Shown: positions 6,853 to 48,113 of the stretch, in pieces | Numbering within the stretch: the first letter of the stretch is position 1 | Layout: every line of letters starts with the position of its first letter | Assembly: GCA_965637545.1 (NCBI GenBank) | Contig: OZ281494.1 | Span: forward strand, 16,306,001-16,370,000 | Length of the DNA: 64,000 bases | Source of the DNA: Phallusia mammillata | Lineage: Eukaryota | Direction of reading: 5' to 3' | The notes under the pieces: generated by a model | Database searches by the model: none | The model's input: the letters and a program-made list of their open reading frames with translations, nothing else | Told to the model about the DNA's origin: nothing | Translations under genes and position numbers: made by a program

Positions 6853-6908
6853 GGTTACCTTTAAAATATAAATTTTTTTAGGAACAAATCAGGACTAAAA
6901 TGAAATGT

Positions 6909-12020: not shown

Positions 12021-12335
12021 GTACACATTTAAGACAGATTAAAAAGGCAGAACTTGTAAAATCATTAGAAGCTTTAAATGTAGCATAACTGACATACCGG
12101 ATCCTTAGATTTTTTCTGCCAGCAAGACCGTAGATATTTTTTTCGCCTATTAATCATTGATTTCCAACAGATAAATAAACAGGTAGTGGCGAAAACAACT
12201 TTTACACTGGTAAGTCGCATTTCATCATTTGTGGTGCAGCAGTTCGTGGTGGCCAGAAATCAAGTTTAGCAAAACTTTTTTTGTATTACATTGACCTGAA
12301 CACGTTTCAAAAAGCCCAGACATTTATAAATTCTC

Positions 12336-18876: not shown

Positions 18877-19769
18877 GTTTAAGCATTTTCAGATATGCCT
18901 TGCTTACGATCGCGTGCCAGCTCAAGCCATGACTAATCAGTTTCCTTCTCTGCCTTACCTGAAGTTTCCAGTCAGTGACGCATAGAGCTATTCAGGGTTA
19001 TCAGCAGGTCACCCAGTGCAAAGTTTTATTTACAAGTGTTTTTGCACTTTATCAACATCAAGTGGTATTTTTTTAAATCGCTGCAACATGTGTATTCAAA
19101 CTTTTAGAATAGTGGTTTCCAATCGATTTGTAGTTACCCTTTTTATATCTTCTTAATCTGCGGACCCCCAACGTAATTTTTTTACGTTTCTTGAATTATA
19201 CGTTATTACGCTTTTGAAGCATTTTAATCCACTCGCACAGTACTTTAATTTCAATTTTTAATTTTCTGTACAGTGACAGTCAACGCAACAGAGCGATTAC
19301 ATACATATCAATGCTATAAATATGCAAATATGATAATTTACTTTACATTTAAACATTAGTTAACAATTAGATAGTGGAAAACGTGATTAAAATGATATAC
19401 TGCCATTCAATTAGGCAAGTATTAAACAGTAATTTGTGAAAACATGAAAAAAACATGAGATGCCTCAGTTCATTCTGTGGTTAATGCGTGAATCACAAAA
19501 ATGCAAATATTAGTGTGTTAAGTTGAAGAGAAGAGCTGACATGTCTCTACTAATATATCATTTTAAACATAGATAAAAAATTAAGTGTACCCTAGATATA
19601 GTATCTAATCTAAGAGCACAATCGGATAGCATTTTGACAAAAATTTTTGATCATTTGAAAAAATGATAAATCTTATTCGTATCAGCCCTATAGGTTCAGT
19701 ATTCGCAAACATTTTTGGTGCAGCAGTTTGTGGTGGCCAAAAATAATGTTTGGCAATGGTTGGCATTCT

Positions 19770-22700
19770 TCATAAAGTGAGGTTTTCGTAAGCTGATACT
19801 TTTTTCGGATCTTCGTAGTGATGAACAGTGTCTGCAATGTTTTAAAATATACGTATTGCATTCACTGATCCGATTACTTTTAAAAAGTTTAAAGATTTTG
19901 TTATTACCTTCGTGGCATGGTGCTGTGTTAATGTACACAGGTTCCCTAATGTCTACAGTCTCATACCCACCATCTCCTGCATATAAAGTTGTGTAAACAC
20001 AGTTTTAAATGCAATTTTAGAACAAAACACTTTTTTAAAACACAAAAAGTGAAATTGTGTCAGAAAATGGTGTAAAAAGCGAATACAAAGAATACAAAAA
20101 ACCTTCACCTAAAAGCATCACTACTTATTCCGTACCTTCTGTATTGTAAGTAGCTGCCTGAGAACAGTTTTTCTTTCTGTTTCTGAAAAAATGTTTATCA
20201 ATTTATTGTAAGATTGGATATGCAGTACATTGTTTTTCGTGCAAGTATTTATATTTATATTTTAACCTAAATATATTACCTTTTCCAAAAGATGATTACA
20301 CAGACCAGCACAAGAATAAGAGCGATGGCACCTCCAGCTACACCTGCGATTATTCCGATGGGTGCTTCCCCGTTTTCTTGCGATATTAATTCTGATTATA
20401 AATATATTGTGGGCGTTTTCAAGATCCAAAATCCGTAGAAACTATTCAGTTACCACACTTTCTTTTACTTTGATTTGTTGTCGTAGTTTGAACAGTTGTT
20501 GGGTGACGTACAACACAAAAACCAATTTCAACAGGACCTATAGTTCGCGTGCAATGTATCACGTACAGCTAAAGCCAAATGCAGATTTAGTTACAAAACC
20601 TGTAAATAGGATGTTTATATGTTTACCTGAAATGTGTAGGTGTAGGGTACAAGTCCAGTCAAACTAAGTACTGTGTGTCCACTTGAAACATTTTGTGTTG
20701 CTATAGTATCATTTTCACCAATACGATTGAATCTCACCTAGATAATTCGAGATTAGTGTTGTAGGACTGCAGGAGAAAAAAACTTTTAGCTTGAAAAAAA
20801 TAACAACTTTGTGTCGACCATTTGTGACCACTTTTTGAAACCCGAAATTTCCTTGCAGAAAAAAATGCTTTCTGCAATCTTTCAAAAACATTTATGTAGT
20901 ACACATACGGTTGGTTTTACTTAAACAATTATAATAAAATGCATTGCGAATGTATCAAATCTCAAAATATTCTTGAAGGTATACGACGACATACCTGGTA
21001 ACCGTTGACTCCTTTACGATTATTTAATGATGGATTGTAAAGGGTACATGGTGTTTGTTTTGTTATATTGGCACCGATCACCGATACAGGCGAAGAGGTT
21101 TCCACTGTCGTTTGGGCAACAACTGTTTCGCATCCTGCAACTCGCGTGGTGAGCTATCGTAAACAAATAACAAGTAAAAATATATTGTATACAAGTTCTG
21201 TTAAAAATTGGTTAAAATATTTACACCACTTTAATTTGAAGATATATAATTTTTTGAAGATATACTGTATACCTCAATTCGGTAAAATGTGTTGTATTGT
21301 AATCCTCCGATTGAAGTTGAACCCGTCTCAAATAATGTATTCGTTACAGTCGAGTGATTGGTTGAGACAGCTTTCACCTGTAAGTAAAACAATTGATAAA
21401 AAAGCAGAAAAACTAGTTTCAAAGAATAAAATTTAGGAACTGTGGACAAATAATTTACCTGCACTGGTGTATTGCTTTGTTGTTTTAGCGGAACATAGTT
21501 GGTTGTCCAGTTTACTTGAATGGTGTCAGGGTTGCAAGTAGAACGGCGGGCGTTTACTGTAACTAAAAGCAAGCAAATTTAATAAAAGAACGCTCGAAGT
21601 TTGAAAAACTTATATGTTGAGCAACTTATATGAAAGAAACGGCAAGCACTGTCTTCAGCAGCTTTTTTTCGATAACTACTAATTGAGTAAACAATATTAG
21701 GAACTGAGGATACGTAAAACAAATTAGCTAACTGTAACTTACAACCATCGATTATATATTATTATACGTCTTGCAAACAAACACCAGACAGAAGATTGTT
21801 TCGGGGATTCGCAAGAAAAGGGTTTAAGACCACTGTATCACAGCGTAGGTAAGTATTATCTTTAGTATCATGGTTCATTGTAACTTACATTCTAACTGAC
21901 ACGCATAATACCCATATACACCAACACACTTCTTTGAGGTATCTACCCAAGCTTGTCCATATTGCAGTGCGCTTTGCATGCAATCCGCTGAATCAGGCTG
22001 TGTTGCTTGATAAGTTTCGACAAAAACTCTAAAAACTGAAGAAAAAAACAATTATTTTATTTTAGATGTTTTAAATTTATTACTAAAGAGTTTCAACAAA
22101 ACAATTGTGAGTTGTATTCACCATAACGCTAAGATCTTTTCTACTCTTGAACTTACCAGGTAAGAACAAAGATTCCCATCTTCTATAATACGGCATCGAA
22201 TTGTTGTCTGTGTTTTTCAACATCGAAGAATGATCGTTTGCTCGGTAATTAAAAACTTCCTTAAATTTTGTTACATCATTCCCTGTTCCACCATATAAAA
22301 CAAATCCCTGAATCCAACCTGGCGCAGAAAATTTTTGTTGCAAAAATAGACGGTTTTCAAAACGTGTTATAAATCACCTCCTTCATTGCATGTTGTTTTT
22401 GATGTTATCCACCACCTTTTATTCTTTATGAGGTCCAGTAATCTGCAAAATCTTACCTGCTTCAATCCCGTACCACTTCTGTAACAATGGTAACATGTTA
22501 TGATGTCTGTAGTAATTTTAACTTATTGCTTACGTTTTATACAAATGAATAACTTTTGTAAAGTTCTGGGGTTGCGTGGTAAAATACCCCAGTTTTGCTC
22601 CACCAATGTTTGATATCCATACTTTCTGTACATCTACAAATAATCATGAAATAATATGATTCTACAAATCATAAGGGCGACAGAACAACCTGATTTCAAC

Positions 22701-23019
22701 TATTTAAGCGTTTACACCAACCTCCTAAATACATTTTAGTTGCAGTGCTGATGAGGCTTTCACGAACGGTTGGATTGGATATATTGGCAATTCGACATCC
22801 TTTTCCAGCACATTTTAATTTTGCTGTATTTCCATCGACAACTTCCCTCGACAACTGAAAAACTTGATTTCCTACATTAAAGATGGAGGTGCAACTTGCT
22901 GGCAAAACAAACAATTGTTTAAGGTCCTGTTTGACAAAACTTTGAATACTTTGATTCTTACCTTGAGTATTAACTTCGTAAAACCAAAACATTAACAACA
23001 ATAGCACAATTATTTCCAT
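19770..23019 (-). CDS. Gene C1: CTL-CTL-FN3-FN3-TM receptor with an ITIM-containing tail
   Basis: Exon 1 at 22962-23019 (MEIIVLLLLMFWFYEVNTQ); the exons checked splice in frame. TM 20280-20391; tail exons 20136-20182, 19908-19976 and 19770-19831 encode RNRKKNCSQAATYNTEGDGGYETVDIREPVYINTAPCHEDTVHHYEDPKKVSAYENLTL*. Confidence 0.85.
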
Positions 23020-23286: not shown

Positions 23287-23575
23287 CCGCCCAAATACAT
23301 TTTATGCGTGTGGTAATGAGTTTTTCTCGAACGGTTGGATTGGAAATGTTGGCGATTCGACCACCATTTACAACACATATTAATTTTGCTGCTTTTCCAT
23401 CGACAACTTCGGTTGACAATTTGAAAACATGATTTTTTACACTGAACCCGGAGTTGCAACTTTCTGGTAAGACAAAGGATGTGTTCAGTTATTTTCTTTA
23501 CAAAACCACAGTTTTTACTTTTTACTTTTGAGCATTTGCCACGTAAAATATTAATAGCAAAGGCAGATTATTCAT
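23287..23575 (-). pseudogene. Orphan exon 1 and exon 2 relic of the receptor family
   Basis: MNNLPLLLIFYVANAQ followed by SCNSGFSVKNHVFKLSTEVVDGKAAKLIC..., with a frameshift near the exon 2 end. No further family exons lie before C1 exon 1. Confidence 0.75.
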
Positions 23576-27800: not shown

Positions 27801-30480
27801 CTTTATGTCAGGGGTGGGCAATCTTTGTCACTGTGGGGCCAAATGCAATTGCCAAAATTAGATCGCGGGCCGCACCTTTATATAACACAAGGTGATTTTA
27901 CTTCGTTGCATACCAAAAATGCCTTACTGAAAGTAAAATTTGCATTTGATTCTAGCAGCATATTGTCTGGTCGCAGAAAAATAGCACCGGGCGCACTAAT
28001 CTGCTCAGAAAATATAACAATTGGACTCCTTTGCCAGTACATTTGAAACCAAAAAGTGTCTCTGCGGGCCGCACAACTTTAAACAATTGACCGCAGGTTG
28101 CCCACCCCTGCTTTATGTTGTCCGTTAAACATCCGTCATATTTCGCATGATTGCGCTATACTCTAAATTTACCAAAAACTCTTGAAATATTTTCACTTTA
28201 GTTGGTTTGTGACACAGCAACGTTTAGGGAAGAATGACTTACATTGCAGTTGACAAACGTAGTAAGCTAATTTGCCATTGCAAGGGATGCTTTCCATTTT
28301 CCAGGTGCTCCCATAGTGAAGCACTGCTTGCTGGCAGCCGTTCTGCTTGGCCGGTATCGCCAAATAAGCACGAGATGTGTTACTCCAGCGCCAATTCTTT
28401 GTTTGTACATTGTACCTTGCTCCGAATATGACGTTGACCACTGCGAAATAAAAGTTTTATAAAACATGGGCTCACTGGGCAACCGGACATTTTGTAAAAA
28501 AAACTTGAATTTACATATGTGTCATATTTAAAAAAATGATTTTGCCTAATTGTTATATTAAGTTGGTTAACAATGTTTGGTTCTATTACCTGGAGTTAGA
28601 AATGGCAGAACAAGAGCGTCCTTTACAAATGTCTCGTTTACAGCTTTCCTGTAAAGTCGTGTGGAGTAGTCTTTTTGAGGTACGACATAAAGTTTCTCGA
28701 CGTATTTGTTCTCCTGTGTTGCCCCGTACATACTGAAGTCTTGTTTCCAACCTTGAAGACGGCAATTGGTGTTTTATTAATTTTACTACAATACGTGCTG
28801 TCAATTTTAGAACACTGCAATACGCACCAAAATCGCAACTTGTGCCGACAAAAATTGCAAATTTTTCATATTTTTCATGACAAAAGGAAATCCGAATGCG
28901 ACCTTTTGCCCATCTGCGTTCAAAATATGATATCAGATTGCAAGAGCAGCCCAAGAGCTAATTAGGGTAATGCAGATTGTTCGAGAAAATGTTCAAATTA
29001 GTGTTGGTTAAGTGTTACCGAAAATCTACAACATCACACGGCGGCTCATATTTCGCAAAATTTCGATAGGTGGCGCGAAAGCACAAATACTTATTTAAAA
29101 CAATATATTTCTAAAACTGCAGACGATTAGAGGTATTATGGTTAAGGAAGGCTATTATCATTAATAAATTCAATGAAACTAACTTTAAAACTTAGTTTCT
29201 TCAATTTGTTAAAAACTCAATTTTGTTAAAAACTATCCCTAACCCTGCCTCTGTTTGGGTGAAAAATAAATAATTTCGTTCTTACAGAAAGTTTTGTTTT
29301 GTATCACTTAAAACCAGCTTTCATAGGGTAAAAATAATAATAAAGGATCAAAACTTATTTTACCAACAACTAAGCAAAAAGGTTTACGTTTTGAAAAGTT
29401 TAAAAGAGGCAATATCCGACGAGTTAGTTACTCTGCTCCACTGCGAAACGTGAGACAGACGAGAAAAACGGTAGCTTCCCTTCGAATTGTGATATACGTA
29501 AACAGTTTGAATTTCTGCATGAAAATATGTTTTTAGTCATACTTGTCTAAAATGTTAACAATCAATAATGCACAGAGCCCCTTTAAAACGATAAAGAACA
29601 TTCGCCTAAAAGAATTAAAACATTTCAGCGAAATTTGTCATAGATCCATGGTGGTTGGTTTCGCCCCGATTCGCAGAATATTTAGGCCAAACATATCATT
29701 CTGCAGTTACCACAAAACAAAGCGCGCCACATCTACACTAAAAAGAACTATGGCATGTTTGCGGACCAATTTTAATATAAACGCCACTGTTTTCTAAACG
29801 GCAGCGACATTTCATTAATTCTTATTAAAACACTGAAAGAAAGTTTAAAATCGGCCAAGTCTTGCTAATGCTTAAAAAAGTGACATTGTCAAATCCTAGT
29901 ATAATTTACCTTGGGCGTATTTCAAATTGCTGGCACGCACGACTGCCTGAGTAATTGAACGGTTATCCAAGAATGCTAAACTGCCGTTCATATTGGAGCA
30001 TTTCTTTTCAGCTGTTAAAGCATCGCTCATGAAATCTGATAGAACAAAAAGCCTGTTCCCGATTGAAGTGATCCCTCGACTACAGCCAGAAGCCATTGTT
30101 TGGGCTGCAAAAAAATCAACATTATCATCATCTATTAATTCCTTCAGTTTTACGCGAAACCAAGTAAAACAATATTTTCTGAACAACGTTTATAATGAGT
30201 TTTCGTAGTGTTTATTTTGATCGGCAGTAGATGTCGTAGCAAAGACTTGCACTCAAAAGCAATTAAAACTTAAAAATGGCGTTCCGCAAAGAACACGGTT
30301 TAAAAATCAGACTGTTTTTAACATCCCGAGTCATAGCAACGACTCGCAAAACTTTAGGATATCCTCTTTAAGGAAACTTACGTTTAGCTTGATAAAAATC
30401 TGACATTTATACTCACCTAAAACAACTCGTCGACTAAAACATGCCAGAAACAGAAATGTGCATCCGAATATAAATTGCAT
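24857..30480 (-). CDS. Gene E: divergent CTL-CTL-FN3-FN3-TM receptor with tyrosine tail; two non-canonical donors (possible pseudogene or secreted form)
   Basis: Exon 1 at 30417-30480 (MQFIFGCTFLFLACFSRRVVL). CTL exons 29910-30104, 29388-29514, 28828-28913, 28590-28751, 28243-28440. FN3 exons 27633-27730, 27208-27315 (LSPGKQYNIT), 26946-27119. TM 25885-25972. Tail exons 25396-25464 (ADDGYETVDVRQPEYINT) and 24857-24912 (HHYEEPNKVFVYENY*). Intron phases match A-D. The boundaries of exon 10 are uncertain. Confidence 0.75.
27809..28110. mobile_element. hAT-type MITE in an intron of gene E
   Basis: TIR CAGGGGTGGGCAA ... TTGCCCACCCCTG; perfect 8-bp TSD CTTTATGT. Confidence 0.85.
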
Positions 30481-31215: not shown

Positions 31216-34200
31216 TTATCGGTAGTTCGCGTATAAGTCGAATGAAGAAAGATAGCCCAAAACGACACGATAACAATACTTGTACAAGTTCTGCAAAACG
31301 ACACATTATTCTGTAATTATCTGACTCTCAGTTTTCATGTTGTATACTTAATATGATTATTTGCTAACATACCTCATTGTCCACCATTTTTGGTCTCATT
31401 ACCCTCAAGTCCTTCACTGTTCCAAACACGTCCACTCTGTTCTCAGTCTTCAAGCGTTCAAGAATATTTACAAGTGCAATGAAGGTTCCTGTCCGGGCAC
31501 ATCCGTTGCTGCAAGAGGTTTTTAGATTTGGATCAAAATGAACTTTGTTTTGACTTTATAGTATTTACCTGCAGCACGCTAGTATACTGCCTTCTTGTCG
31601 TGAAAGGTTTGTTGCCAAAGTCAAGTTTATTATTTCTATCATAGTGGAATCGCTGGGAGGCAACTCATCCTTTATCCAACCGGTAACTTGGATCATAATC
31701 AAGTTTGAAACACCCTGTTGGCGAATGGATTTAATAGAAAAATATAACAATAGGTGTCCAAAAATGTTTTTTATGCAACGATGGAATTTTAAATCGCCGT
31801 AAAGGACTAAACGATCTTGTCTTTTCTTTCGAAACTATTATGGTAAGCATGTTACGCTAAAAGTCATGCTTTGCATGCTTTGCATGCTTTGCATGCTTTG
31901 CATGCTTTGCATGCTTTGCCAGGGCCAGAGATCTATTTGTGTTTGGGGTTGTTTGATAATGTACTGTTCACGTACCAAATGTTTTGATTTGGATGAAACT
32001 GTCACTGGTACAACTTGATAACCGTTGTAGCTTTTTGATTTTCCCGAGGCCACTTGTATCTCTCCATACTGTGTAACTTCGCCATCTCTTGCAACCTGTA
32101 CGTAAACACCAAACAACTAATAGGAAATTGCGCTTCTAAAGAGTTTGTTTACCCTTTCGTTACTTCCTAGTGAAACGATGACTGATAGATTTTTGTTCAA
32201 TACAATCATCCAAAACTCTTCATCATTAACGCCAGGTTGGTAAGATGCAGAAATGAAACTCTTTGAACAACCAAGATCCTAAAAGGAAACGGCGGAAATT
32301 TTGATTGACAAGCATCAAACGAAAGTTTACAGAGAAACTTTGAGCATCAAGCGAATGTTCACACAAAACACAATAGCGTATGTAAAGATCTCATCTAAAC
32401 TTAGACAAGCTACTTTCGACAAAGATACGTACACCACTTATATAGCTGCGTGCACAAGTTGCTTGGGAAGTCATGGGCCATTAGTAAGGCATTGTAATGA
32501 ATGGCGATTGGTTTTGAGTGTAACCATAAAGTGTGACCATACATTTTTCCTTAAAAACATACAAAACAATTCGTTTATTAACAGTTCTACTAACCTGAAT
32601 ATACGAACTGGTTGCCATCGTTTCCCCACTGCTTCCTGTTTTACCTGCAACAGGTAACATTAGTAAGCCCTTTAACGAACGCGTCGAATTCAATATTAAT
32701 TGTCTACCTTTGTTACTGGCGTCACTGCTGTATTGCCAAGAATCTAGCTGCTTGTGCTCTTCTTTTGCTATTTTATTCCTAACAGCAAAGTCAGGTCATT
32801 TAAAAAGCCAGTTAATGTCGTATATAGCTACTTACAGTTGATCAGTATTAAAGCTTTGTAATTCCGCAGCCGATCTGTCGCTGTTAGGGAGTGATATATG
32901 TTCGACAATAAGTTTGTGAATGAAGACAAATTGTTCCTGAGAGCAAAATCAATTTGGATTTGAATTTGATTGCACCCTTTACTTAACAAGGTATATGTTT
33001 GATTTTACTAACCCACGATTGAACCATATCAGTTCTGTTCCTTCTCATTGCTAAAACTGTATTTGGAACATTAACTTCCCTATTGGCATCAAGTTGGTCA
33101 AAAAGAACGTCCATTGCAATGAAAGTTCCAGTGCGACCAACCCCAGCACTGGAAGTGAAAGCGAAACAATAACCTAACGTCCAAAACAAGTTAAAATGTT
33201 TTACAAACCTGCAATGAACGACAATCGGATGATTTTTATCGTGAATTTTCTCTACCATTTCACGCAAGTATATCATTGTGGACGTTGTTACCGGGATTCC
33301 GTGGTCTGGCCAAGATATGTACTGCAGCTGAACTACAGTGCGTTCCTGCTACACAAGCCAAGTTCAAAGAAAACTGCACGTTAACAAGTCAGCAAATACA
33401 AACCGTTTTCTTGTTTGTTAGGATGAATTTTCGCTGAATGATGCCACTTAGTTTGTTTTCTTCTGTGGTGCGCAACGTGAGATTACCGTGTTGTTCAGCT
33501 TCCCCATGGTTTGGCCAGTACTTCTCGCACTTTTTCTAAACAGAACACAACTTGACAAATATGGGTAGAACAAAGCTTTTCTGCTTTAGGTTGTTTTTTA
33601 GCAAAGCATTTCCACAAAAAAACATAAACAAACAATCTTTAGTATGTCTATTTCACATACTTACGCTCATTGTACAACACGTGTAGCAAGTAAGTTACGA
33701 AAATTATATGTGTAGTGTGTCTATACCTTTTCCTTTAATCCTGTAAGCATAACGATGATCGATGTGTTTTGTTCCCAAATCATCAGCCAAAAGTCATCCA
33801 TGGTGCAATTTCTTGGTCCTTGTGTGGCGATAAATTTGTTTGGCTGATCAAAACCCTGTTAGGAAAGTTTAGGTTGTAATTAAAAACTAGCCTATGCTTA
33901 AAGTAAATCCATTGATTACTCACATCAAGAAATGAGGCATTGATATAGTCATTTTCAAGTGCAGTTTGCAGCACAACTCTAGCATGATCATCTATAAACA
34001 AAAACAAAAACTGATCTTTTGTTTGTTAAGAGCTTGTTAATACAAGTAATTGTAAGTTTTGCCGTTATAACAAAGCAATAATATTTGTCAAATTATAGTA
34101 AATTGTATAAATTATATAGATGAACAAATTTCATGCGCTTTTAGCGGTAGCCGAGTTAAGCTATCTATAGCTACGTGCTATGTGCAAACGTTTCAATTCG

Positions 34201-37200
34201 ACATAAAAAAATGTTTTGTAGAAGAAAATAATTTTCAATTAACCAAACACTACAACAACCCGTCTTCCATTACTGTGATTTGCATACATTACAAGTTATT
34301 TATAGCCTAACTTACACGGAAATATATTTTTGTATCTGTTCCTTGCAGCGTTTGTTTCGAGTTTAGCTACCGCGTTTACTTTGCTTGCATCTGTTCCGTG
34401 TTTCGCGAGTTTCTGGAATGTTCCAAGAAAAGTTAAATACACAAACACAACAAACCAAGCGTGCCCGGAAGTGTTTGAGTTTACGCATACATACAAGCAA
34501 CTAGCGAACCATTCTAACGTTGCTTCAACAAAGTATTTCTGTGTATATGTTTGGTTAAAAAGGGAAATACCTTACCTGTAATTTTTGAAGTGAAAAAAAT
34601 CAAGAATAAACACATCGATACATTTTCGATTTTTAGACAGATTGCAAATTGAATAAAACATTGTTTTACAGTGTTACCTCAAATTCTTGACGAAATGCAG
34701 CATAGTTGTTGGCGCACTTTTTGAAGTAAATCCGTTGAAGGTTTTTCTTTGACGTTGAAGAACTGTTTCCGATATTTTGGTAGAGAGAAACATTACCATA
34801 CTTTTCTGCCTCTAAATAACCAAGACAGAGTTAAGATGTGTCAGTTCTTTTGCTAAAATCGTTCTGTTAACTCTTTTGCTAAAATCTTTCATTTTAATGC
34901 CCTACCACTCCTACCTGATTCAGGTAATGCGTTTTGCTCGAGTATTCCATTTGAAGGATCTTGGTTCTAAAAAAACAATACATATCATTAACATCAAACG
35001 CAGGTAAGACTTAAAACGAAGATATAACTCTACATTTAATGCCACTGCTGTGCTTGCAGTTGTCACTGTCACACGACCTTCAGCATTTTCCGAATCTTAG
35101 CAAAACAAACAAGTGTTAATCTTAAAATAGGTAAATTAGCACCGCAACAACTATTTCCATACCGTTTGTTTGAAAAGTGGCTCCCACGAAACTAGTTTTG
35201 TCCCTTTTGCACCTAAAATACATTTAGTAATTCTATAATTTTAGTTGGTATGTTTTACACAGATTTTAAAAGTTAACGACAAAAAGTGTCTTAGGTGTGT
35301 TTTTATAATTTAAAATAAATTACCTTTTCCAAATAACAATTACCAAGACCAGCAGAAGAATGAGAGCTATGACACCCCCAACAGCACCTGCAATTATTCC
35401 GATGGATGCTTTCCCGTTTTCTTGCGATATTAATTCTGATTTATTACAAAATATTATTAGCGTTTTCAGGACCGAAATTCAGTTACCAGTTTTGCGTTTA
35501 CTTCGATTTGTTGTTATAGTTTGAACTGTTGTTGGATAGCGTACAATACAAGAGCCAAATTCAACAGGACCGATAGTCCGTTTGCAATGGATCACGTACA
35601 ACTGAAGCCAAATGCAGATTTAGTTACAAAAACCGTAATTAAAAGTTTTATATTTTTACCTGAAGTGTGTACACGTAGGGTACAAGTCCAGTCAGATTAA
35701 GTACTGTGTGTCCACTTGAAACATTTTGGGTTGCTATAGTAACATTTTCACCAATACGATTGAATCGTACCTAAAAATATAAACAATTTTGTATCGCCCA
35801 TCTCTAACCAGTTTTTAAATCACACAATTTCCTTGAATCAAATTTGTCCTTGAAAAAATGCTTTCTGTGATCTTTCAAATACAATTATCGCATTACACAT
35901 ATGGTTGGTTTTGCTTAGAACAATTATTATTCATTGCGAATAATAAAAATCATTGCGAATGTATCAAATCTGAAAACATCTTTAAATGTATACAACGACA
36001 TACCTGGTAACTGTTGACTCCTTTACGATTATTTGAGGATGGAATGTAAATAGCACATGGCGTTTGTTGTGTTAAATTGGCACCGATTGCCGATACAGGC
36101 GCAGAGGTTTTCACTGACGTTTGAGCAACAACTGTTTCGCATCCTGCAACTCGCGTCGTGAGCTGTCGTAAACAAAAAACAATTAAAAATATATTGCATG
36201 TGGCAAACGATTAGGTTCTGTTAAAAAATATGTTAAAATATTTCCACCACTTTGATAAATTTCTGAAGGTATGTGATGGTATACCTCAATTCGGTAAATT
36301 GTGTTGTATTGTAATCCTCCAATTGAAATTAAACCCGTCTCAAATGTTGCATTCGTTCCAGTCGAGTGATTGGTTGAGACTGCTTTTAACTGTAATTAAA
36401 ACAATTGATAAGTAAAAAGGCAGAAAAAGTAGTTTCAAAAGATAAAATGTAAGACCTAGAGACAAATAATTTACCTGCACTGGTGTATTGCTCTGTTGAA
36501 CATAGTTGGTTGTCCAGTTTACTCGAATGGTGTCAGGGTTGCAAGTGGAAGGGCGGGCGTTGACTGTAACTAAAAGCAAGGAAATTTAATAAAATAAAGC
36601 TCAAAGTTAGGTTATAAGTGCTACAAGCTGCACTTATATGGAGGAAACGGTTGCACTGTCCACAGCAGATTGGTTTTAGATACTACTAATGTGAGTAAAC
36701 AATATATAAGAACTGAGGATACGTAAAACAAATTAGCTAACTATAACTTACAAACATCGATTATACATTATTATTAGTCTTGCAAACAAACACCAGGCAG
36801 AAGACTGTTTCGCTTTCACGCCTCCTATGCCAGCGCTTACCAAACTGCGATGTATTTGATTTTTTTAATTTGGTGAATGTAGTGTAACCTATTGTTTTCA
36901 ACTCAAATGACAAAAGAAGGCGAAGGTTGCACATAACCGTAATGTTATCTTGTCTATGGCGTATCACATTCTCCTTAGATTAGCTAGATGTCATTAACGC
37001 TGCATGTTGCTGCATCAATTAACTTAGGTTTTGACTGTTAATGGAAGCTTTCGTATTGGTAAGAGAATCTGATGGTTCACCTCTACTCAAGAGGCAAGAC
37101 CTTTTGCACAACACAATAATCTTATAGAGGGCGATATCGAGTCAGAGTCATTAAAGGAGGGACGATTCGCAAAAAAAGGTTTAAGACCACTGTATCACAG

Positions 37201-38365
37201 CTTAGGTATACGTATTATCTTTAATGCCACGGTTCTTTGCAACTTACATTCAAACTGACACGCGTAATATCCATGTACACCAGTACACTTCTTTGTTACA
37301 TCTGTCCAAGCTTCTTTATATTGGAGTGCGCTTTGCATGCAATTCGTTGAACCAGGCTGTGTTGCTGAATAAGTTTCCACAAAAACTCTAAAAACTAAAA
37401 TAATAACAATTGTTTTCTGGATTTTATAGTTTTTACCTTTTGTTCATAGATATTAAACAAAACATTTGTGGATAACTCTGGGTCTTTTGCACTCTTACAC
37501 TTACCAGGTAAGAATAAAGATTCCCATCTTATATAGTACGGCATCGAATTGTTGTCTGTGTTTTTCAACATCGAAGAATAATCGCTTGATCGGTAATTAA
37601 AAACTTCCTTAAATTTTGTAACTTCTCTCCCGTTTCCGCCATACAAAACAAATCTCTGAGTCCAACCTGTCGTATGATTTCTTTGTTGCAATAGTTAAAA
37701 AATTTCTTGTTAACAGACTCACCTCCTTCATCACTGCATTCTGTTTTTGATGTTATCCACCACATTTTTTTTTTTATGTTTTTAGGTGAGCAAAATCTTA
37801 CCCGTTGTAAACCACTATTATTTCTGTAACAATGGTAACAGTTTATGATGTCTGTAGTAATTTTACAACTAAATGCGTACGTTTTATACAAATGAATAAC
37901 TTTGATAAAATTCTGGGGTTGCGTGGTAAAATATCCCAGTTTTGCTCCACCAATGTTTGATATCCATACTTTCTGTACATCTACAAATAAACAAAAGCAA
38001 TTTACTCCTTCCTTGTTAAGGGCGACAAAACGACCTGATTTCAATTATTCAAGCGTTTACACTAACCTCCCAAATACATTTTATTCGCAGCGATAATAAG
38101 GTTTCCACGAACGGTTGGATTAGAAATGTTGGCAATTTGACCTCCTTTTCCAGTACATCTTGATTTTGCTGCATTTCCATCGACAACCTCACTCGACAAA
38201 TCAAAAACTTGATTTTCTACATTAAAGACGGAGGTACACGTTTCTAATGAAACAAACAATTGATTAATCGTGCTGTTTGCCAAAACTCTGGTCGTTTTAA
38301 TAATTACCTTGAGTGTTAACCCCGTAAAACAACAACATTAACAACCATAGCACAATTATTTCCAT
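31216..38365 (-). CDS. Gene B: full-length receptor-type protein tyrosine phosphatase with C-type lectin and FN3 ectodomain and tandem PTP domains (30 exons, 1088 aa by manual count)
   Basis: All 30 exons join in phase with GT-AG introns (3267 nt including stop). First PTP domain: [67 protein letters not shown]. Second: [18 protein letters not shown]-terminus DLYANYR* resembles the YANF end of PTPRA/PTPRE. TM exon 35324-35435. Confidence 0.92.
31866..31919. repeat. (CATGCTTTG)6 tandem repeat, intronic in gene B
   Basis: Six 9-bp units between exons 27 and 28; explains the QSM repeats in the ORF track. Confidence 0.85.
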
Positions 38366-38539: not shown

Positions 38540-39115
38540 CATGGGCGTCCGCAGCGGGGGGGCAAGAGGGGGCACGTGCCCCCCCCCCCCCCCTGGAAAA
38601 AAGAAAAACGCAAACGGTCGGAGAATCCGCAACTTAAAACAAAACACAATAAACATTCACACAGTGTCATACAAAAACTATTCCTGGAACGTAAATTGAA
38701 GACGCCGTAGGTCTCCACCCCTTTATTACAAGTGTAACTGTAACAGAACAGAATAAGGTTTTACAACAAATTAAATGAATCGAACATTATTACTTAACAA
38801 TAGTTCGGTAACAAGCATATTATTACGTCATTGATGGATGTGTCAAACAGGCATTATGTGATATCTTCACTGTATTTGTTGTTACATCTGATAAGGTTCG
38901 TCAATGTAAATCCTACTTCCGTTAAAAAGTATTTGCCAACCTACCACATACTTCAGTGATGTTTAATATTGTGTTTATTGTATTATTTTGCTACTTTGGG
39001 ATTGGCAAGAATGAGTAGCACAGTCAGATGATTTTTGTTCTGAAATGCCGTTTATCGAACGGCGATGTGACGATAGTTTTGCCCTCCCCTGTATTTTTTC
39101 CTGCGGACGCCCATG
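38540..39115. mobile_element. hAT-type MITE upstream of gene B
   Basis: TIR CATGGGCGTCCGCAG ... CTGCGGACGCCCATG; 8-bp TSD CGGGTATG; empty site at about 4935 upstream of A. Confidence 0.88.
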
Positions 39116-39609: not shown

Positions 39610-40593
39610 TTACATAACATCGTAGCGACAAAGGGGAACGCCCCCGACAAATGTATCAAAGTTCCACATTCCAGTGAGAGTGATTGGGACATTTGGTTTT
39701 GTGGCAACCGTCCATCCGACATTTTCACCACGAGACCCAGGAAATCCATTGGCCCACTTTACTTACACTGGTCCACCGTTAAGACTTTGTAATTGTCCAT
39801 TCTACACAAGAACTCATATTATTTGCCGGTTGGAAGCTTGTTGCTATCCGAAACTACAGAGAAGGTTATGTAAATAGTTTCACCTGATAAGTTGACCCGA
39901 GCCAGATTTCAACGACATTGTTGGAGGGTTTGTCAATGTAGACATTCCATGTTTTTTGGACATATTTGTACAGTACTTCATACATTTCTTGGTTTTCGAT
40001 GTCAACCAGCGCTTCGCCCTGGTAGCTGCAGAGATCAGCTGCTGCTTGCTTGCTTCCACCCGCATTATAGGAAGCAACAATTAGCGGCAGGTGGTAGCAA
40101 TAACCATTGTAGACGATTCCAGAACAATTGAACTTGGCTTAAAGTAGGGTGAAGTTTAGTGTGTGTAATAAATAGTTCCGTTAATTAAAAACATGATGGC
40201 CCAGCTTTAAGATCGGCTTTGAACTTTAGACTAATTGAGATGTTTTTGATCTATCGGCACCGGCTCCGTTTTTTTGGGGGGGGGTTGAGAACCACTGTTA
40301 TAGAGATTGGTCGCTATAATAAGACAACTACCTTGAACGATCGATTCAATTCGACGATCTATTTCACTCCAGTCAGGTCGACTAGCTAGTCCTGGAGGTC
40401 CAATCGGTCCCTGTTTTCCAGGCGGGCCTTGGGGCCTCACTGGACTACCGCCCACGTTTCCACTTTGTCGGTTAAAAATGCTTTGCACTGATCGGCAGAA
40501 CATGTAATTTCCATCATTCTGTCCTTTGACTACTACCAAACTGGTTGAAATTAACAGGCAATATAATAGCAGCATTTCAGAATGTAATCTCAT
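39610..40593 (-). pseudogene. Second collectin-like copy with a premature stop in exon 3
   Basis: Exons 40332-40593, 39884-40137 and 39610-39801 match the first copy in length. TAC (Tyr) is TAA at 39763-39765, which removes most of the last CTL exon. Confidence 0.78.
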
Positions 40594-40650
40594 GGTTACC
40601 TTTTAAATATAATAATATTTTAGGAACAAACCAGGACTAAAATGAAATGT

Positions 40651-42952: not shown

Positions 42953-45900
42953 TCAGAGGCCAGACCACTTTACTAAGCACTCTGCACGTTTTTTTCTTTT
43001 AGTAGCAATAATTAGTTCGGACTGTTTCGTCATTTTTAATGCGTTAATAAATCTGTTCACAGTAGGTTTGTTTTGTGCATATTTACATTGGTATATTACA
43101 AAACGGGCACATAGAAATATACAATTTAACAATGGTGTAACAGAACTGTACGAGTGGGTTCCAAATAAACATAACGCTACATTCGGTTTAATATTCAGTA
43201 ATAGTTTGCGAGAGATCCAAGAAGTAACATTTTCCCAATATAGGGCGACAACTTTGCAAGTGTAAAACAAATGAAAATTGGTTTCAGGGAAACTTTCACA
43301 GAAAACGCACTTTTCTGAAGTTACTATGCCAAAATTGTATAGTTTATTATTTGTTATTACCGCTCTTAAGTTTAATTTGATTTGAAACGCCCTTAATTTT
43401 GTTTCTAAGGTACAGTTATACGTGTTCCTGTACACCTCCCTCCAGTTGGGCTTTTCTGTACTAATCCCTATGTCGGTTTCCCATTTTTTCTGTTCTTGTG
43501 TTGGCGGTTCTGATGTGTGGTCTTTTACGAAGTTGTAAGTTTCTTTAACTGTGCCGTGCAGGGCTATGGTATGAAACCAAGTTGGTTTAGTTTCAGTGGG
43601 TACTCTGTTGGTTTGTCGGTCATATATATCCCAATTGTCTGGAATTGCGGCGACTAATTTGATAAAATAGGTGAAATCTTGATTTGTTGGCTGAAAGTTA
43701 TATTTGAGGGCAAGTTCGTCGTATGTATAGTAATCACCATCATTGTTAAGTAGATCAAGGTGACTGAGAATACCAGCGCGAATTAGAGGTAGCATGTAAA
43801 AGGGTTTTAGGCGTGATCGGACTTCTTTATTTAACCAAAGGGGTCTATAAACATTAGCGGGGAGATTTGTAAGTTTTGCGAATTTTTTGCAGGCAGAGAC
43901 TGCCTTTCTTAATGTTCGTAAGGGGATTGATTGAAGGAAGAGTTTTGAGTTGGGAGACACACTGCTGTTTAACCACGAGTTGAATTCGCTGGGGCTCCCG
44001 ACCGAGGTTTCGAGATCTTTCCATGGAGATGTATACGAATCGTTGAATAATCGATTGACCCATTTGATATCTAATGACACCAGATATGCGTCCAGGTCAA
44101 ACATATTGATTCCCCCATCCTCAATATTACAACAGAGCTTTGCTCGTTTTACTTTTTTCCATTTTGAGTTCCAAATGAATTTAAAAAAAATTCTTTTAAG
44201 GTTTTTGACGAATGCTTCTGGTAATTCGATAGGTACAACATTGACTTTGTAGGTCAAGGTGGGAATAATTAAACTTTTTAAAATGCAAACCCGCCCAATT
44301 AGCGTTAATCCTCTCCCTGACCAAATGTTTAGTATGGCTTTAGTTTTATCAATTAGTCCTGCGAAGTTTAATTCTAACAGTTTTTTTGGCGACCCGGTAA
44401 TAGGGAAGTTAATTCCCAAGTAACGAAAATAGGTTTGGGGCCACGATAGTCCTTTATCTAAATATGGTTTCTCAAGCGATGAGCGTTTTGAGCCAATAAA
44501 GAACGCCACTGACTTTTGGATGTTAATTTTACAACCAGACATCAGGCCAAATTCGTTAATAATTGAAAAGGCTTTGTCAAAGTTTGATACGTCCCCGTTT
44601 AAAAAAAAGTGTATCATCCTCCAGGAGTGAGACCTAAAAATCGATACCATTTAAGTTAAGCCCAATTTGATCATCTAGGCGAAGCGCCGCGGCTAAGCAT
44701 TCTATACAAAGCACAAACAGAGTAGGAGATAGGGGATCTCCCTGTCTTACACCTCTTTCGATTTCAAATTCGCGTGACAACTGGTTGTTGTTAATTAGTT
44801 TGCTTGTGTATCCAATGAATAAGTTTTTCACCAAATCCGAATGTTTGTAATACCGCGTAAATAAAGTTCCACTCGATCGTATCGAACGCTTTATAAATAT
44901 CCAACGAGAGAATAGCGCCTGGGCATTTATAGAAATCCGCATAATCAATTATGTCAAATAATAGGCGAAGGTTATCACCAATAAATCTTCCTTTAATAAA
45001 TCCGTTCTGGTCTGTTTTGACAAGATGGTGTAAATTGAGTTTGATGCGATTGTTTACAGCTTTGGACACTATTTTATAATCGGCATTCAAAAGAGTTATC
45101 GGTCTATAGTTCGTGACGTATTGTTTATCTTTACCGGGTTTGGGAATCAGGGTCACCACACCTTGGCGTTAAACTGGGCTGAAGTGCCCCATTTTCTCCG
45201 AATATTGCCATGCGTCGCAAAACAGGTCTTTAAGGTCGTCCCAAAACGTTTTAAAAAATTCAATTGGAAAGCCATCAAGACCTGGCGATTTGTTTAGGGG
45301 CATAGATATCAGCGTCGCGTAAAACTCTTTTTCTGTAATTGGTAGCTCGCTATCCTCTAGTTGTGCCTGATTCAGGGAGGGCAAGCGTAATTTCGAGAGG
45401 CGCGATAACAGTTCTGGGTGGGTAAGAGGATTATTAGGCTGTTGATACAGCTGCTCATAGAACAAAACCAATTCGTTTATAATTGTATTTTGATCTGTGT
45501 TTGTAACACCGTTTATGTTTAATTTCTCGATGGATTTCTTTGCAGAATGGCGTTTTTCCGTGGAGTTTCGTTCCCCATTTTCTACCCATCTTGCCCTACT
45601 CCTAATCATAGCACCTTTTGTTTGTATCTCCGAAAATTTATCTAGTTTTGTTTTGAAATCGTCAAGTTTTTCCGCAAGGACAGGATTTGGTTGGTGTGTT
45701 GAAGTTAGTTCACGCTCCGCATTTTCTATATTCCGCTCCAGGGACCGTTGTCGGGCAAAGTTACGTCGTTTAATAATCGCGCTGTACTGAATAGTTTCCC
45801 CCCGGATAACGGCTTTCAAAGCGTCCCATCGAACATGAGGGTTTACACCACAACTAGCATTATTTATTTTAAAATCCCTTATTGTGTTTTGGATCTTTGA

Positions 45901-46683
45901 AATGTAGTTATTGTCAGAGAGAAGATTTGTATTTAATTTCCAGTACCCGCTGCCACGTGGGCTTTGGGAAAATCTTAATCCTAGGGAAATGATCTTGTGG
46001 TCAGATTTAATGCCCACCGAGATGTCGGATGACGTCACTTTGTTAAATATTAAATTCGAAGTTAAGAAAAAATCTATACGAGTAGCACAAAAAGGGTTAA
46101 GTTGAAGTCGCGAGTATTTTTTGGTAGCTGGGTGAAGTCTACGAAAAACATCACATAAGTCATAAGTATTTATGTGCGATAGAATTCGCTGACGAGAATT
46201 CCGATTGGGATGTGGAGACCCGCGGGTTTTATCTAAACGTTCTTGCAAAATAGCGTTAAAATCGCCACCGATAATTAAATTAGGATTATTTCCTAAAGCG
46301 AGCTTATCAAAGATCATGTCAAAGAATTCTGGTTTGTCATTGTTGGGAGCGTATAGGTTGCAGAGTCTTATTTCTGAATTGTTGAACAGGAGGTTGAAAA
46401 TAGCGTACCTCCCTTCAGGGTCTGCTTCGACTTCGGTAATCGCGTAAGTGAATTTTTTTGCAAACAGAATAGCAACGCCCTTGCTGCGCGTAGAGCCGTG
46501 TGCCCAAATTATTTCATTTCCCCATTCTAATTCCCACAATTTTTCTTCATTAATGGAACAGTGCGTTTCCTGAAGGAACATTAGGTGATATGATTTCCCT
46601 TTGAGAAAGTTGAAAATTGTCCTGCGTTTACTACGTTTCCGTAAGCCTCCCACGTTAAATGAAGCGATATTTAAAGTAGACAT
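42953..46683 (-). pseudogene. LINE ORF2 (endonuclease and reverse transcriptase), disrupted
   Basis: FLQETH, GDFN, RIDFFL, KSPGLDG, RPITLLNADYK, GVRQGDPLSP. Frameshifts near 45165, 44800 and 44620, plus a stop at about 44634. The YADD-equivalent motif reads LEDD. Confidence 0.88.
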
Positions 46684-46729
46684 GAAAAATAAACAAACAA
46701 AAAAGGATATCGAAATACAGAAGGGTATA

Positions 46730-48113
46730 TTAGTATTTTTGTACTCCAGGTTCTATATCCCATTCATATTCAAGACCACAGTTACAGTTGTATGGTCTGC
46801 TTGGTTCTACTTCTTCTGATGATTTTTTTCCACAACTACAGTGGATTAATTTTTTTTTACAAGCCGGATTTGAGCATTCTTTGCTCATTGCGATTTTGGG
46901 TAAAGGGTTTACAGTGTCACAAGTACAAGCAATAGCATACCTTTTGCATTGGATGCACTCATACAGGTTAGTTTCCAATCTGAATTCCGGTTGCAGTTCG
47001 TCGCAGCATGGCATTATTTTCATTTGAGCTCGGCATTTCGGGCACTTTGCTTCCGTTTGACGAATCCTTATTAAAAATAGTTCGGCCTCATCACAACACG
47101 CTTTCGCAACTTTATATTCTTCTTTACATTTGCAACAATAGAAAAGTTTGGAATCTGGGTCAATCAAGCTTCCTGTGTTGCATTGAGGACAAGCCACGGG
47201 GATTGTGAATTCACATAGACTTCTTGACTTGCTTTCAGGGAATTCGGTAGGGCTATTGCGTGGACGCTTTCTAGACCCTGCCTGAACAGTCGTAGCGGTC
47301 TCCAGGTCTGTATTTTCCTCGTTATCTAGTGCTCCTTCGAGAGCAGTGTCGCCACCTGATTCGAGTTGTGACGCAACTAGGTTATCAGGGTCAGTTCGAA
47401 GCTTCACGCGTGACCCAGTTTCCTTATCAGGCTTACTTCGAACTTCCGTGCTTGACCTAGTTCCCTTACCTCTGGATGTGGTGCTTGTTCTTTGCTGGTT
47501 CTGGGTGTTTTGTAGGTGTGGAAAATCTTCTTGTCTTTTCAAGCAGTTAGACTGTTTATGGCCTTTCTCTCCACAATATTTACACGTTATTATTTGTCCA
47601 TTGTAAGTTACATAGAACTCGTTTCCCATGACACGTATGTAGCTGGGGATGGGATGTTTTTCCAAATCGACTTTGTTCATCGTAGCGATTCTCATTCCTG
47701 AGAAGAGACCCTCTTTATCTTTTCTGTGTGTAATTTTTTTTACCGCACCGTATTGCTCTTCCAGGTTTTTTACTATCAATTCGTTAGGAAAGGGTATAGG
47801 CGCCCATCCAATTCCGAAATTAATGACATCACTTTCGTAGAGTCTCGAGTTTTGAACATATGTAACTTCCATCAATCTTTTATTAAGCTCTACAACATTT
47901 TCCCTTGTTGTACATGTAACATCCACAAGGGTCCCCTTCATTTCCGCTATTCCAACAATTTTTGTAAGCGAAAAATTTTATTTATTTCATTAAATTCCAT
48001 AACTCATCTCTTTTCAGCTGTCTAGAGGCCTTGAAACTCAAACAATTAGGCCTTTTTAGTGCACTCTTTGCACTCTCAGTTGCCGCTTGCGCATAACTAG
48101 GCTGCTTGCTCAT
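46730..48113 (-). pseudogene. LINE ORF1 (zinc knuckle, Cys-rich C-terminus), frameshifted near the N-terminus
   Basis: MSKQPSYAQAA start at 48113; frame change at about 47975 into the 403-aa ORF containing CKYCGEKGHKQSNC. Confidence 0.8.

What the first reader, a model, noticed from the sequence alone, without database searches (positions are those of the whole stretch)
31216..38365. Receptor tyrosine phosphatase with a C-type lectin ectodomain
Seen: an unbroken 30-exon frame links signal peptide, CTL-like units, two FN3 domains, TM and two PTP domains. The first domain has all catalytic motifs (NRY, WPD, HCSAGVGR, Q loop). Known: human receptor PTPs use Ig, FN3, MAM, carbonic anhydrase-like, cadherin-like or mucin-like ectodomains, not C-type lectin domains; the YANx end resembles PTPRA/PTPRE. 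Inference: ligand-controlled dephosphorylation through a lectin-fold sensor.
Basis: partly seen in the sequence, partly recalled or inferred. Interest (0 to 1): 0.8.

Follow-up and report, generated by a model that had tools for sequence, protein, structure and literature searches.

The report
Lectin-headed receptor tyrosine phosphatase gene
This is an intact 30-exon gene, reportedly from a sea squirt, for a cell-surface tyrosine phosphatase whose outer tip looks like a C-type lectin domain split by an extra insert. Humans have no such layout, but it is one copy of a large, unstudied gene family in this genome, and neither its fold nor its ligand has been shown.

Summary
On the minus strand, 38365 to 31216, I rebuilt an unbroken 30-exon, all GT-AG reading frame of 1088 aa. 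It runs signal peptide, lectin-like head, FN3-like stalk, one membrane span, a complete PTP domain D1 ([18 protein letters not shown] loop) and a degenerate D2, ending in YANYR.

D1 exons match Pfam Y_phosphatase and are closest to PTP-alpha and PTP-epsilon among solved structures.

Five paralogues in the window conserve ectodomain exons 2-12 (with two gaps in each D copy), and three also keep exon 1. Spliced contigs from a probable RNA run confirm seven of the phosphatase exons.

The lectin label is only moderately supported. Exon 2 matches the N-terminal half of the surfactant protein A lectin domain (E 0.005) and Lectin_C clusters by language-model features. Exon 6 carries the C-terminal cysteine pattern. 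Exons 3-5 (121 aa, frame-neutral) are an insert of unknown fold. This copy has QPG and WTD instead of QPD and WND, so calcium-dependent sugar binding is not predicted.

The FN3 calls rest on motifs only. I could not fold the spliced protein.

The gene sits in a twice-repeated cassette with sister genes that have the same ectodomain but tyrosine-motif tails. Earlier notes of this scan report the family many times elsewhere in this genome.

Verdict: real, a new variant of a known kind, with function untested.

The parts
31216..38365 (-). Whole coding region: 30 exons, 1088 aa, ATG 38365-38363, stop 31218-31216
   Evidence: Model built and checked. All introns are GT-AG, with a modal length of 55-70 nt.
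38308..38365 (-). Exon 1: signal peptide (aa 1-19)
   Evidence: Hydrophobic N-terminus. It is conserved in paralogues P0 and C1.
38067..38243 (-). [quoted passage not shown]
   Evidence: A profile of six paralogues hits only the surfactant protein A lectin domain in the PDB, E 0.005, aligned over 55 aa including the helix-1 cysteine. Atlas features score 0.92, with 35 of 40 hits in the Lectin_C set. hhalign to the neighbouring collectin-like exon aligns the same register but weakly.
37505..37980 (-). Exons 3-5: 121-aa insert of unknown fold inside the lectin-like domain (aa 79-199; Cys123, Cys141; variable patch in exon 4)
   Evidence: The three exons sum to 363 nt and are flanked by phase-1 introns, so the cassette is frame-neutral. 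No real relatives turned up among 1.84 billion representative proteins. There was no PDB or Atlas family for exons 4 and 5. Exon 4 is the most divergent exon among paralogues.
37248..37394 (-). Exon 6: C-terminal half of the lectin-like domain (aa 200-248; QPG, Cys218, WTD, Cys236, Cys245)
   Evidence: The cysteine spacing C-x17-C-x8-C followed by QFE fits the beta3-beta4-beta5 end of CTLDs (sequence; the consensus is from my own knowledge). Atlas features score 0.86-0.87 to perlucin and Lectin_C clusters. There was no PDB sequence hit.
35487..36569 (-). Exons 7-11: stalk of two FN3-like repeats (aa 249-443), 8 N-glycosylation sequons
   Evidence: Only motif-level evidence (NW in strand B, GLxYxTxYxI and GLVPYxYTL tyrosine corners). 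There were no Pfam or PDB hits at exon level. The exons are conserved in five paralogues.
35324..35435 (-). Exon 12: transmembrane segment followed by basic stop-transfer residues
   Evidence: Highest Kyte-Doolittle window in the protein, 3.18 at aa 460.
34678..35212 (-). Exons 13-16: juxtamembrane region with YGNV and YQNI motifs (aa 540, 546)
   Evidence: 83-95% identical to paralogue P0 at 784-249. Exon 16 has dN/dS 0.17.
32836..34412 (-). Exons 17-23: PTP domain D1 with [30 protein letters not shown] and QSWEQF
   Evidence: Pfam Y_phosphatase on exons 18-22. Best PDB matches are PTPRA and PTPRE. Spliced X3 contigs join exons 19-20 and 22-23-24.
31216..32778 (-). Exons 24-30: degenerate PTP domain D2 (no KNRY loop, WIKDE for [13 protein letters not shown], no Q-loop glutamines) and C-terminal YANYR
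   Evidence: Pfam Y_phosphatase on exon 29, E 2.3e-10. Motifs by inspection. The loose end of an X3 contig joins exon 25 to exon 26.
31222..31233 (-). C-terminal YANY (pY-x-N type motif)
   Evidence: Read from the sequence. The resemblance to the PTP-alpha YANF tail is from my own knowledge.

Best explanation
This is a real, intact, single-unit gene for a type I receptor protein tyrosine phosphatase.

Outside the cell it carries a C-type-lectin-like head that is split after its second beta strand by a 121-aa, three-exon insert with its own cysteine pair. The head sits on two glycosylated FN3-like repeats. Inside the cell it has a PTP-alpha/epsilon-like, catalytically complete D1, a degenerate regulatory D2, and three Y-x-N docking motifs.

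It is one of two phosphatase-type members in a twice-repeated cassette. The sister genes in that cassette put the same ectodomain on short tyrosine-motif tails.

The most likely working (inferred, not shown): binding of a protein or other non-canonical ligand to the variable head clusters or repositions the receptor. D1 then dephosphorylates nearby phosphotyrosines, such as Src-type kinases or the tails of the sister receptors.
For: - Open 30-exon GT-AG model.
- Pfam PTP hits on D1 and D2 exons.
- Nearest solved structures are PTPRA and PTPRE.
- Exon-by-exon conservation of the ectodomain in five paralogues, and of juxtamembrane exons 13-16 in the other phosphatase copy, with low dN/dS.
- Spliced contigs at the predicted junctions of exons 19-20 and 22-26.
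- Exon 2 matches the SP-A lectin domain, E 0.005.
- Lectin_C neighbours by Atlas features for exons 2 and 6.
- Tails with YxxV, YxN and SxYxxL motifs in the sister genes.
Against: - No Pfam Lectin_C or fn3 hit on any ectodomain exon.
- Exon 6 has no PDB sequence match.
- AlphaFold on exon 2 alone gave pLDDT 46.
- No transcript was seen that links the ectodomain to the phosphatase. The spliced contigs are only 96-98% identical and may come from a paralogue or an allele.
- The QPG and WTD motifs argue against canonical sugar binding.
- No ligand, substrate or expression site is known.
Confidence: 0.7

Rival explanations
1. The head is not a C-type lectin-like domain at all. It is a lineage-specific cysteine-rich fold that merely shares short motifs with CTLDs.
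For: - No Pfam hit on the ectodomain exons.
- No relatives for exons 3-4 among 1.84 billion representative proteins.
- No word-sharing relatives of exon 2.
- hhalign probability only 2.6 against the neighbouring collectin-like exon.
- Low-confidence fragment model.
Against: - The only PDB hits of the exon 2 profile are five SP-A lectin-domain sequences, aligned in the correct register over 55 aa.
- Two separate exons point independently to Lectin_C by Atlas features.
- The cysteine spacing of exon 6 is canonical for a CTLD.
- Exon-level Pfam is also nearly blind to the neighbouring collectin-like CTLD exon, E 0.084, so the Pfam negative is weak.
Confidence: 0.2
2. The head is two degenerate tandem CTL-like units, rather than one domain split by an insert. 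Exon 4 (C-x9-WW-x6-C) would be the end of unit 1, and exons 5-6 would be unit 2.
For: Exon 4 has a Cys...WW...Cys pattern that recalls the beta3-beta4 hairpin of a CTLD. The seven cysteines can be partitioned either way.
Against: - Exon 5 and exon 4 have no lectin signal by PDB profile, and exon 5 none by Atlas.
- Exons 2 and 6 alone add up to a compact CTLD of 108 aa.
- Exons 3-5 form a frame-neutral, phase 1-1 cassette.
- Unit 1 would lack the closing cysteine and unit 2 the helix cysteine.
Confidence: 0.2
3. This copy is a silent or decaying duplicate in a fast-turnover family. The frame is still open, but the gene is not used.
For: - Earlier notes say many copies elsewhere in the genome are broken.
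- The RNA-like contigs differ from this copy by 2-4%.
- Ectodomain dN/dS against the sister copy is near or above 1 in some exons.
Against: - All 30 exons are open with intact splice sites.
- Every D1 catalytic motif is kept.
- The one cytoplasmic exon with measurable divergence between the two phosphatase copies, exon 16, shows low dN/dS of 0.17.
Confidence: 0.2

Closest known systems
PTP-alpha / PTP-epsilon (vertebrate R4 receptor PTPs, PTPRA/PTPRE)
   Same: Tandem D1-D2 cytoplasmic part. D1 exons score best against PTPRA and PTPRE among solved structures. The C-terminal Y-A-N-x tail resembles the Grb2/Src-binding YANF of PTP-alpha (my own knowledge).
   Different: By my own knowledge, R4 ectodomains are short, heavily glycosylated and without recognisable modules. 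This protein has about 435 aa outside the cell, with a lectin-like head and an FN3-like stalk. D2 here lacks the KNRY loop, WPD and the Q-loop glutamines. No phylogeny was done.
Collectin-type C-type lectin domains (e.g. surfactant protein A)
   Same: Exon 2 aligns with the SP-A domain from beta1 through helix 1 (with its cysteine), helix 2 and the YLG/WIGL strand. Exon 6 has the C-x17-C-x8-C end pattern.
   Different: - A 121-aa insert follows the WIGL-equivalent strand.
- QPG and WTD replace QPD/EPN and WND.
- There is no collagen stalk.
- The domain is anchored in the membrane as a type I protein, unlike most receptor CTLDs, which are type II.
Paired immune receptors with ITIM or ITAM tails (NK-complex lectin-like receptors, and Botryllus fester/uncle fester as a tunicate example of activating/inhibitory recognition, PMC11507803)
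   Same: Clustered, duplicated genes that share one ectodomain but have different signalling ends. The sister genes carry SxYxxL, YxxV and YxN motifs.
   Different: Here one arm has a covalently built-in phosphatase instead of recruiting one through an ITIM. No immune, allorecognition or pairing function has been shown.
Other reported lectin-domain PTPs
   Same: A Fugu CTLD survey lists PTP-GMC1, a tyrosine phosphatase, among CTLD-containing proteins. I recall a sea-urchin-specific 'PTPRLec' from the 2006 sea-urchin phosphatase survey, but that paper is not held and I could not verify it.
   Different: No sequence comparison was possible. The Fugu entry is named after a mammalian phosphatase (PTP-GMC1, which I take from memory to be PTPRQ, a single-domain type); the paper gives no architecture for it. 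The split CTLD and the tail-type sister genes are not described there.

Membership tests
Classical receptor-type protein tyrosine phosphatase (tandem-domain) | Signal peptide and a single transmembrane segment upstream of the PTP domains in one reading frame | tested here: met
   30-exon open frame. Hydrophobic aa 1-19 and a hydropathy maximum at about aa 455-479.
Classical receptor-type protein tyrosine phosphatase (tandem-domain) | D1 with pTyr-recognition loop (KNRY), WPD loop, HCX5R P-loop and Q loop | tested here: met
   RNRY 604-607, WPD 735, [10 protein letters not shown] 767 and QSWEQF 812. Pfam Y_phosphatase hits on exons 18-22.
Classical receptor-type protein tyrosine phosphatase (tandem-domain) | Second, membrane-distal PTP domain | tested here: met
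   Exon 29 hits Y_phosphatase, E 2.3e-10. CX5R is kept, but KNRY, WPD and the Q loop are lost.
Classical receptor-type protein tyrosine phosphatase (tandem-domain) | Phosphatase activity | not testable with these tools
   Needs a pNPP or phosphopeptide assay with a Cys768Ser control.
R4 subtype (PTPRA/PTPRE) | D1 groups with PTPRA/PTPRE | tested here: inconclusive
   These are the top PDB scores for two D1 exons, but LAR and sigma are close behind and no tree was built.
R4 subtype (PTPRA/PTPRE) | Short ectodomain without modules | tested here: not met
   The ectodomain is about 435 aa with a lectin-like head and an FN3-like stalk.
C-type lectin-like domain (fold) | Significant match to a CTLD profile | tested here: inconclusive
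   No Pfam Lectin_C hit on single exons. The exon 2 profile hits the SP-A domain at E 0.005. Atlas gives Lectin_C neighbours for exons 2 and 6.
C-type lectin-like domain (fold) | Four conserved cysteines: helix-1 Cys paired with the last-strand Cys, and a beta3-beta4 pair | tested here: met
   Cys49 lies in an 'A...C...GG.IA.I' context. Cys218-x17-Cys236-x8-Cys245 is in canonical spacing. All are invariant in six paralogues except Cys218 in copy P0. The pairing itself is inferred.
C-type lectin-like domain (fold) | Predicted or solved three-dimensional CTLD fold | not testable with these tools
   The spliced protein has no reference, so it could not be handed to the structure tool. Exon 2 alone gave pLDDT 46.
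Calcium-dependent sugar-binding C-type lectin | EPN or QPD motif together with a WND motif at calcium site 2 | tested here: not met
   This gene has QPG (212) and WTD (229). Paralogues P0, C1 and C2 keep QPD but have WVD.
Fibronectin type III domain | Match to the fn3 profile or an FN3 fold | tested here: inconclusive
   No Pfam or PDB hit for exons 7-11 taken singly. Only motif-level resemblance.

The most novel reading that the evidence does not exclude
The phosphatase-type and tail-type genes of this cassette form a true paired recognition system. One shared, fast-evolving lectin-like ectodomain is wired either to tyrosine-motif tails or to a built-in PTP that erases their signal. This would be an independent tunicate invention of activating/inhibitory receptor pairing, in which the inhibitory arm carries its own phosphatase instead of recruiting one.
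Probability: 0.15. Interest if true: 0.8.

Novelty: new variant of a known kind. Interest (0 to 1): 0.5.

Why it matters
Receptor tyrosine phosphatases are defined by what their ectodomains sense, and no human member uses a C-type lectin-like domain.

A chordate relative with an expanded family of lectin-headed phosphatases, next to sisters that carry tyrosine-motif tails on the same ectodomain, offers two things. One is a natural experiment on how ligand recognition is coupled directly to dephosphorylation. The other is a candidate non-vertebrate recognition system.

For this single gene the gain is more modest. It is one of the intact copies, and so a good template for cloning, folding and assays.

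Tried and rejected
1. Gene finding. A length-maximising exon chainer over-extended exons (35 exons). A self-trained codon version dropped true exons with weak donors. I curated the model by hand using PTP motifs and paralogue conservation.
2. A 29-exon model with one 258-nt exon 3 was rejected once paralogues showed an in-frame TAA and a 2-nt indel inside it.
3. Pfam on single ectodomain exons found nothing. The same test is nearly blind to the neighbouring collectin-like exon, so this negative is weak.
4. The exhaustive representative search with the exon 3-4 stretch returned only four repeat proteins, judged spurious by their sequences and Pfam content. This query still contained 19 aa of intron translation.
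5. A word-based search with an alignment of exon-2 stretches gave no hit at E 0.01. Full-length relatives were outside its length filter.
6. PDB profile searches for exons 4, 5, 6, 9 and 10 gave no meaningful hit.
7. AlphaFold on exon 2 alone was low confidence, so I ran no fold search.
8. hhalign of exon 2 against the collectin-like exon found the right register but probability 2.6.
9. Folding or searching the whole spliced protein or its domains was left out. No reference exists for a spliced product, long sequences may not be typed in, and read-through of stops by reference is not accepted.
10. Literature: seven searches found no description of a lectin-domain RPTP in tunicates. The sea-urchin phosphatase survey is not held.
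11. The organism name is coded in the run table. 'Sea squirt' comes from earlier notes and fits the compact introns and 36% GC, but I did not verify it.
Full report
**1. What is there**

The region lies in AT-rich DNA (about 36% GC), and the gene reads on the minus strand. I listed stop-free segments, tried two automatic exon chainers, and then curated the model by hand using PTP motifs, splice sites and paralogue conservation.

The final model has 30 exons, and every intron is GT...AG, with most introns 51-122 nt long. It gives one open frame of 3267 nt (1088 aa), from the ATG at 38365 to the TAA at 31218-31216.

The thirtieth exon comes from a 57-nt intron (37880-37824). In this copy that intron happens to be in frame and stop-free. 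Four paralogues (D1, D2, C1, C2) carry an in-frame TAA there, and two of them (C1, C2) also a 2-nt indel, so it is non-coding.

**2. Cytoplasmic part**

Single exons of D1 hit Pfam Y_phosphatase with E from 1e-14 to 2e-4, and exon 29 of D2 hits it with E 2.3e-10.

D1 has [30 protein letters not shown] and QSWEQF, so all catalytic loops are present. D2 keeps a CX5R ([10 protein letters not shown]) but has no KNRY loop, has WIKDE in place of WPD, and has lost both Q-loop glutamines. It is most likely a regulatory pseudo-phosphatase, as in other tandem RPTPs (my own knowledge).

Two D1 exons score best against PTP-alpha and PTP-epsilon among all PDB chains, with LAR and sigma next. The protein ends in YANYR. 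Two more Y-x-N motifs (YGNV, YQNI) lie in juxtamembrane exon 16.

**3. Ectodomain**

Five paralogous genes lie on the same strand of the window: a P0 copy at 4763-249, D1 at about 15467-12933, C1 at about 23019-20279, D2 at about 56016-53481, and C2 at about 63598-60836. They conserve ectodomain exons 2-12 one by one with open frames, except that exon 8 matched only in part and exon 11 only over its first 25 aa in the two D copies. An exon 1 match was reported only for P0 and C1, with a partial one upstream of C2. These are therefore real coding exons.

Pfam finds nothing in any single ectodomain exon. The same test barely sees the collectin-like lectin exon next door (Lectin_C E 0.084), so that negative is weak.

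- **Exon 2.** A six-paralogue profile of exon 2 hits only the lectin domain of surfactant protein A in the whole PDB. E is 0.005, and the alignment runs over 55 residues from beta1 through the helix-1 cysteine to the YLG strand. By language-model features exon 2 lies at 0.92 from clusters in which 35 of 40 share the Lectin_C set.
- **Exon 6.** It lies at 0.86-0.87 from perlucin and other Lectin_C clusters. It has the spacing C-x17-C-x8-C followed by QFE, which is typical of the last three strands of a CTLD.
- **Exons 3-5.** Exons 4 and 5 gave no family signal, and the exon 3-4 stretch gave none either. An exhaustive search of 1.84 billion representative proteins with that stretch found only four repeat proteins, which I judge spurious.

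Exons 2 and 6 together make 108 aa, the size of a compact CTLD. Exons 3-5 add 363 nt between two phase-1 introns, so they form a frame-neutral cassette.

My reading is therefore one lectin-like domain split after its WIGL-equivalent strand by a 121-aa insert with its own cysteine pair (Cys123, Cys141). The most variable patch of the family lies in exon 4.

A reading as two degenerate tandem units is not excluded.

In this copy the sugar-site motifs are QPG and WTD. Three paralogues keep QPD, but none has WND. Canonical calcium-dependent sugar binding is thus not predicted.

The stalk (exons 7-11) has FN3-like strand motifs and eight N-glycosylation sequons, but no profile hit. 'Two FN3 domains' is plausible, not shown.

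**4. One gene or two?**

The membrane-span exon is followed at 111, 67, 67 and 103 nt by four small juxtamembrane exons. These exons are 83-95% identical in the other phosphatase copy, and exon 16 has dN/dS 0.17. The phases match throughout.

Contigs of a run labelled as probable RNA (X3) lie on the gene in pieces that end at, or within one to three bases of, my exon boundaries. They join exons 19-20 and 22-23-24, and through a loose end exons 25-26. The splice pattern of the phosphatase half is therefore right, and at least one family member is transcribed.

Those contigs are only 96-98% identical to this copy, and none reaches the ectodomain. The link between ectodomain and phosphatase in a single mRNA is thus inferred from gene structure, not seen.

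**5. Context**

The window holds a twice-repeated cassette:

- a phosphatase gene (4763 / 38365)
- a collagen-plus-lectin 'mini-collectin' (6888-5874 / 40602-39613)
- a reverse-transcriptase remnant (10721-11733 / 51264-52277)
- a D-type receptor
- a C-type receptor

A LINE-like element is inserted in the second copy.

C- and D-type genes share the ectodomain but end in short tails with YxxV, YxN and SxYxxL motifs. Earlier notes report the same family in many other windows of this genome and call the organism a sea squirt. I did not verify the species. The many 90-99% identical DNA contigs laid on the gene agree with a multi-copy family.

**6. How it most likely works**

- **Shown:** an intact type I receptor with a motif-complete PTP-alpha/epsilon-like D1.
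- **Inferred:** the variable lectin-like head binds a ligand that is probably not a canonical calcium-bound sugar. Clustering or segregation then changes D1's access to substrates. Candidate substrates are Src-type kinases, as for PTP-alpha, or the phosphotyrosine tails of the sister receptors. The Y-x-N motifs could dock Grb2-type SH2 domains.

A paired activating/inhibitory system is an attractive reading, but it is untested.

**7. Known or new?**

A 2024 review of RPTP ectodomains treats the family by subgroups R1-R8, and its only mention of 'lectin' concerns the separate receptors dectin-1 and CLEC2. Seven literature searches found no description of such a tunicate family.

The combination of a CTLD and a PTP is not wholly unprecedented. 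A Fugu survey lists PTP-GMC1 among CTLD-containing proteins. I also recall a sea-urchin 'PTPRLec', which I could not check.

I file this as a new variant of a known kind. It is a classical tandem RPTP with an unusual, split lectin-like head, and it belongs to a lineage-specific expanded family.

**8. Limits**

The spliced protein has no reference, so I could not submit it, or whole domains of it, to the fold, family or full-length homology tools. Only single exons and stop-free stretches were tested.

Noticed in passing
window 249-4763, 5874-6888, 10721-11733, 12300-15467, 19700-23019 versus 31216-38365, 39613-40602, 51264-52277, 52900-56016, 60250-63598: The whole gene cassette is present twice on the minus strand: phosphatase receptor, mini-collectin, reverse-transcriptase remnant, D-type receptor, C-type receptor. 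The offset is about 33.6 kb for the first two genes and about 40.5 kb for the last two.
   Followed up: partly
window 5874-6888 and 39613-40602 (minus): Small secreted collectin-like genes: a signal peptide, a short Gly-X-Y collagen run, then a lectin-like domain. The N-terminal lectin exon gives only weak Pfam hits (Chordopox_A33R E 0.004, Lectin_C E 0.084), and the C-terminal exon has a single cysteine.
   Followed up: partly
window 42956-47977 (minus): A LINE-like non-LTR retrotransposon (Exo_endo_phos endonuclease, zf-RVT) in three stop-free pieces, so its frame is broken. It is present only in the second cassette copy and accounts for most of the extra 7 kb.
   Followed up: partly
window 10721-11733 and 51264-52277 (plus): Duplicated reverse-transcriptase remnant (RVT_1 E 3e-4), followed by a stretch that looks to the eye like a GIY-YIG nuclease motif. 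It is possibly Penelope-like and is broken into several frames.
   Followed up: no
window 19700-20200 and 12300-12500 (minus): Tails of the C- and D-type sister genes carry GYETV/GYESV and VYINT/VYMKT motifs. In C there is also HHYEDP and a terminal SAYENL (ITIM-like). The D tail stops earlier.
   Followed up: partly
window 23315-23461 (minus): An extra, orphan copy of lectin exon 2 lies about 300 nt upstream of the start codon of gene C1. It is 65% identical to this gene's exon 2 over the 49 aa that align, and its end diverges.
   Followed up: no
window 3629-3772 (minus): In the other phosphatase copy (P0), the beta3 cysteine of the lectin-like domain is replaced by tyrosine while its partner cysteine is kept.
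   Followed up: no
window 29899-30189 (minus): A 97-aa stop-free stretch just 3' of the gene has an 'A...C...GSLA' pattern like the start of another lectin-like domain. Pfam finds nothing.
   Followed up: partly
window 31855-31915: A 9-nt microsatellite (GCATGCTTT and its rotations, about six copies) sits in intron 27. If read through it stays open, which misled the automatic exon chainer.
   Followed up: yes
window 38555-38596: A G-run followed by a C-run forms an imperfect palindrome about 200 nt upstream of the start codon.
   Followed up: no
window 37401-38000: The summed depth of DNA contigs in runs X1 and X2 is three to five times higher over exons 3-5 than over the phosphatase exons. 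This suggests that more genomic copies of the insert exons exist, but the tool warns that depth is not copy number.
   Followed up: no
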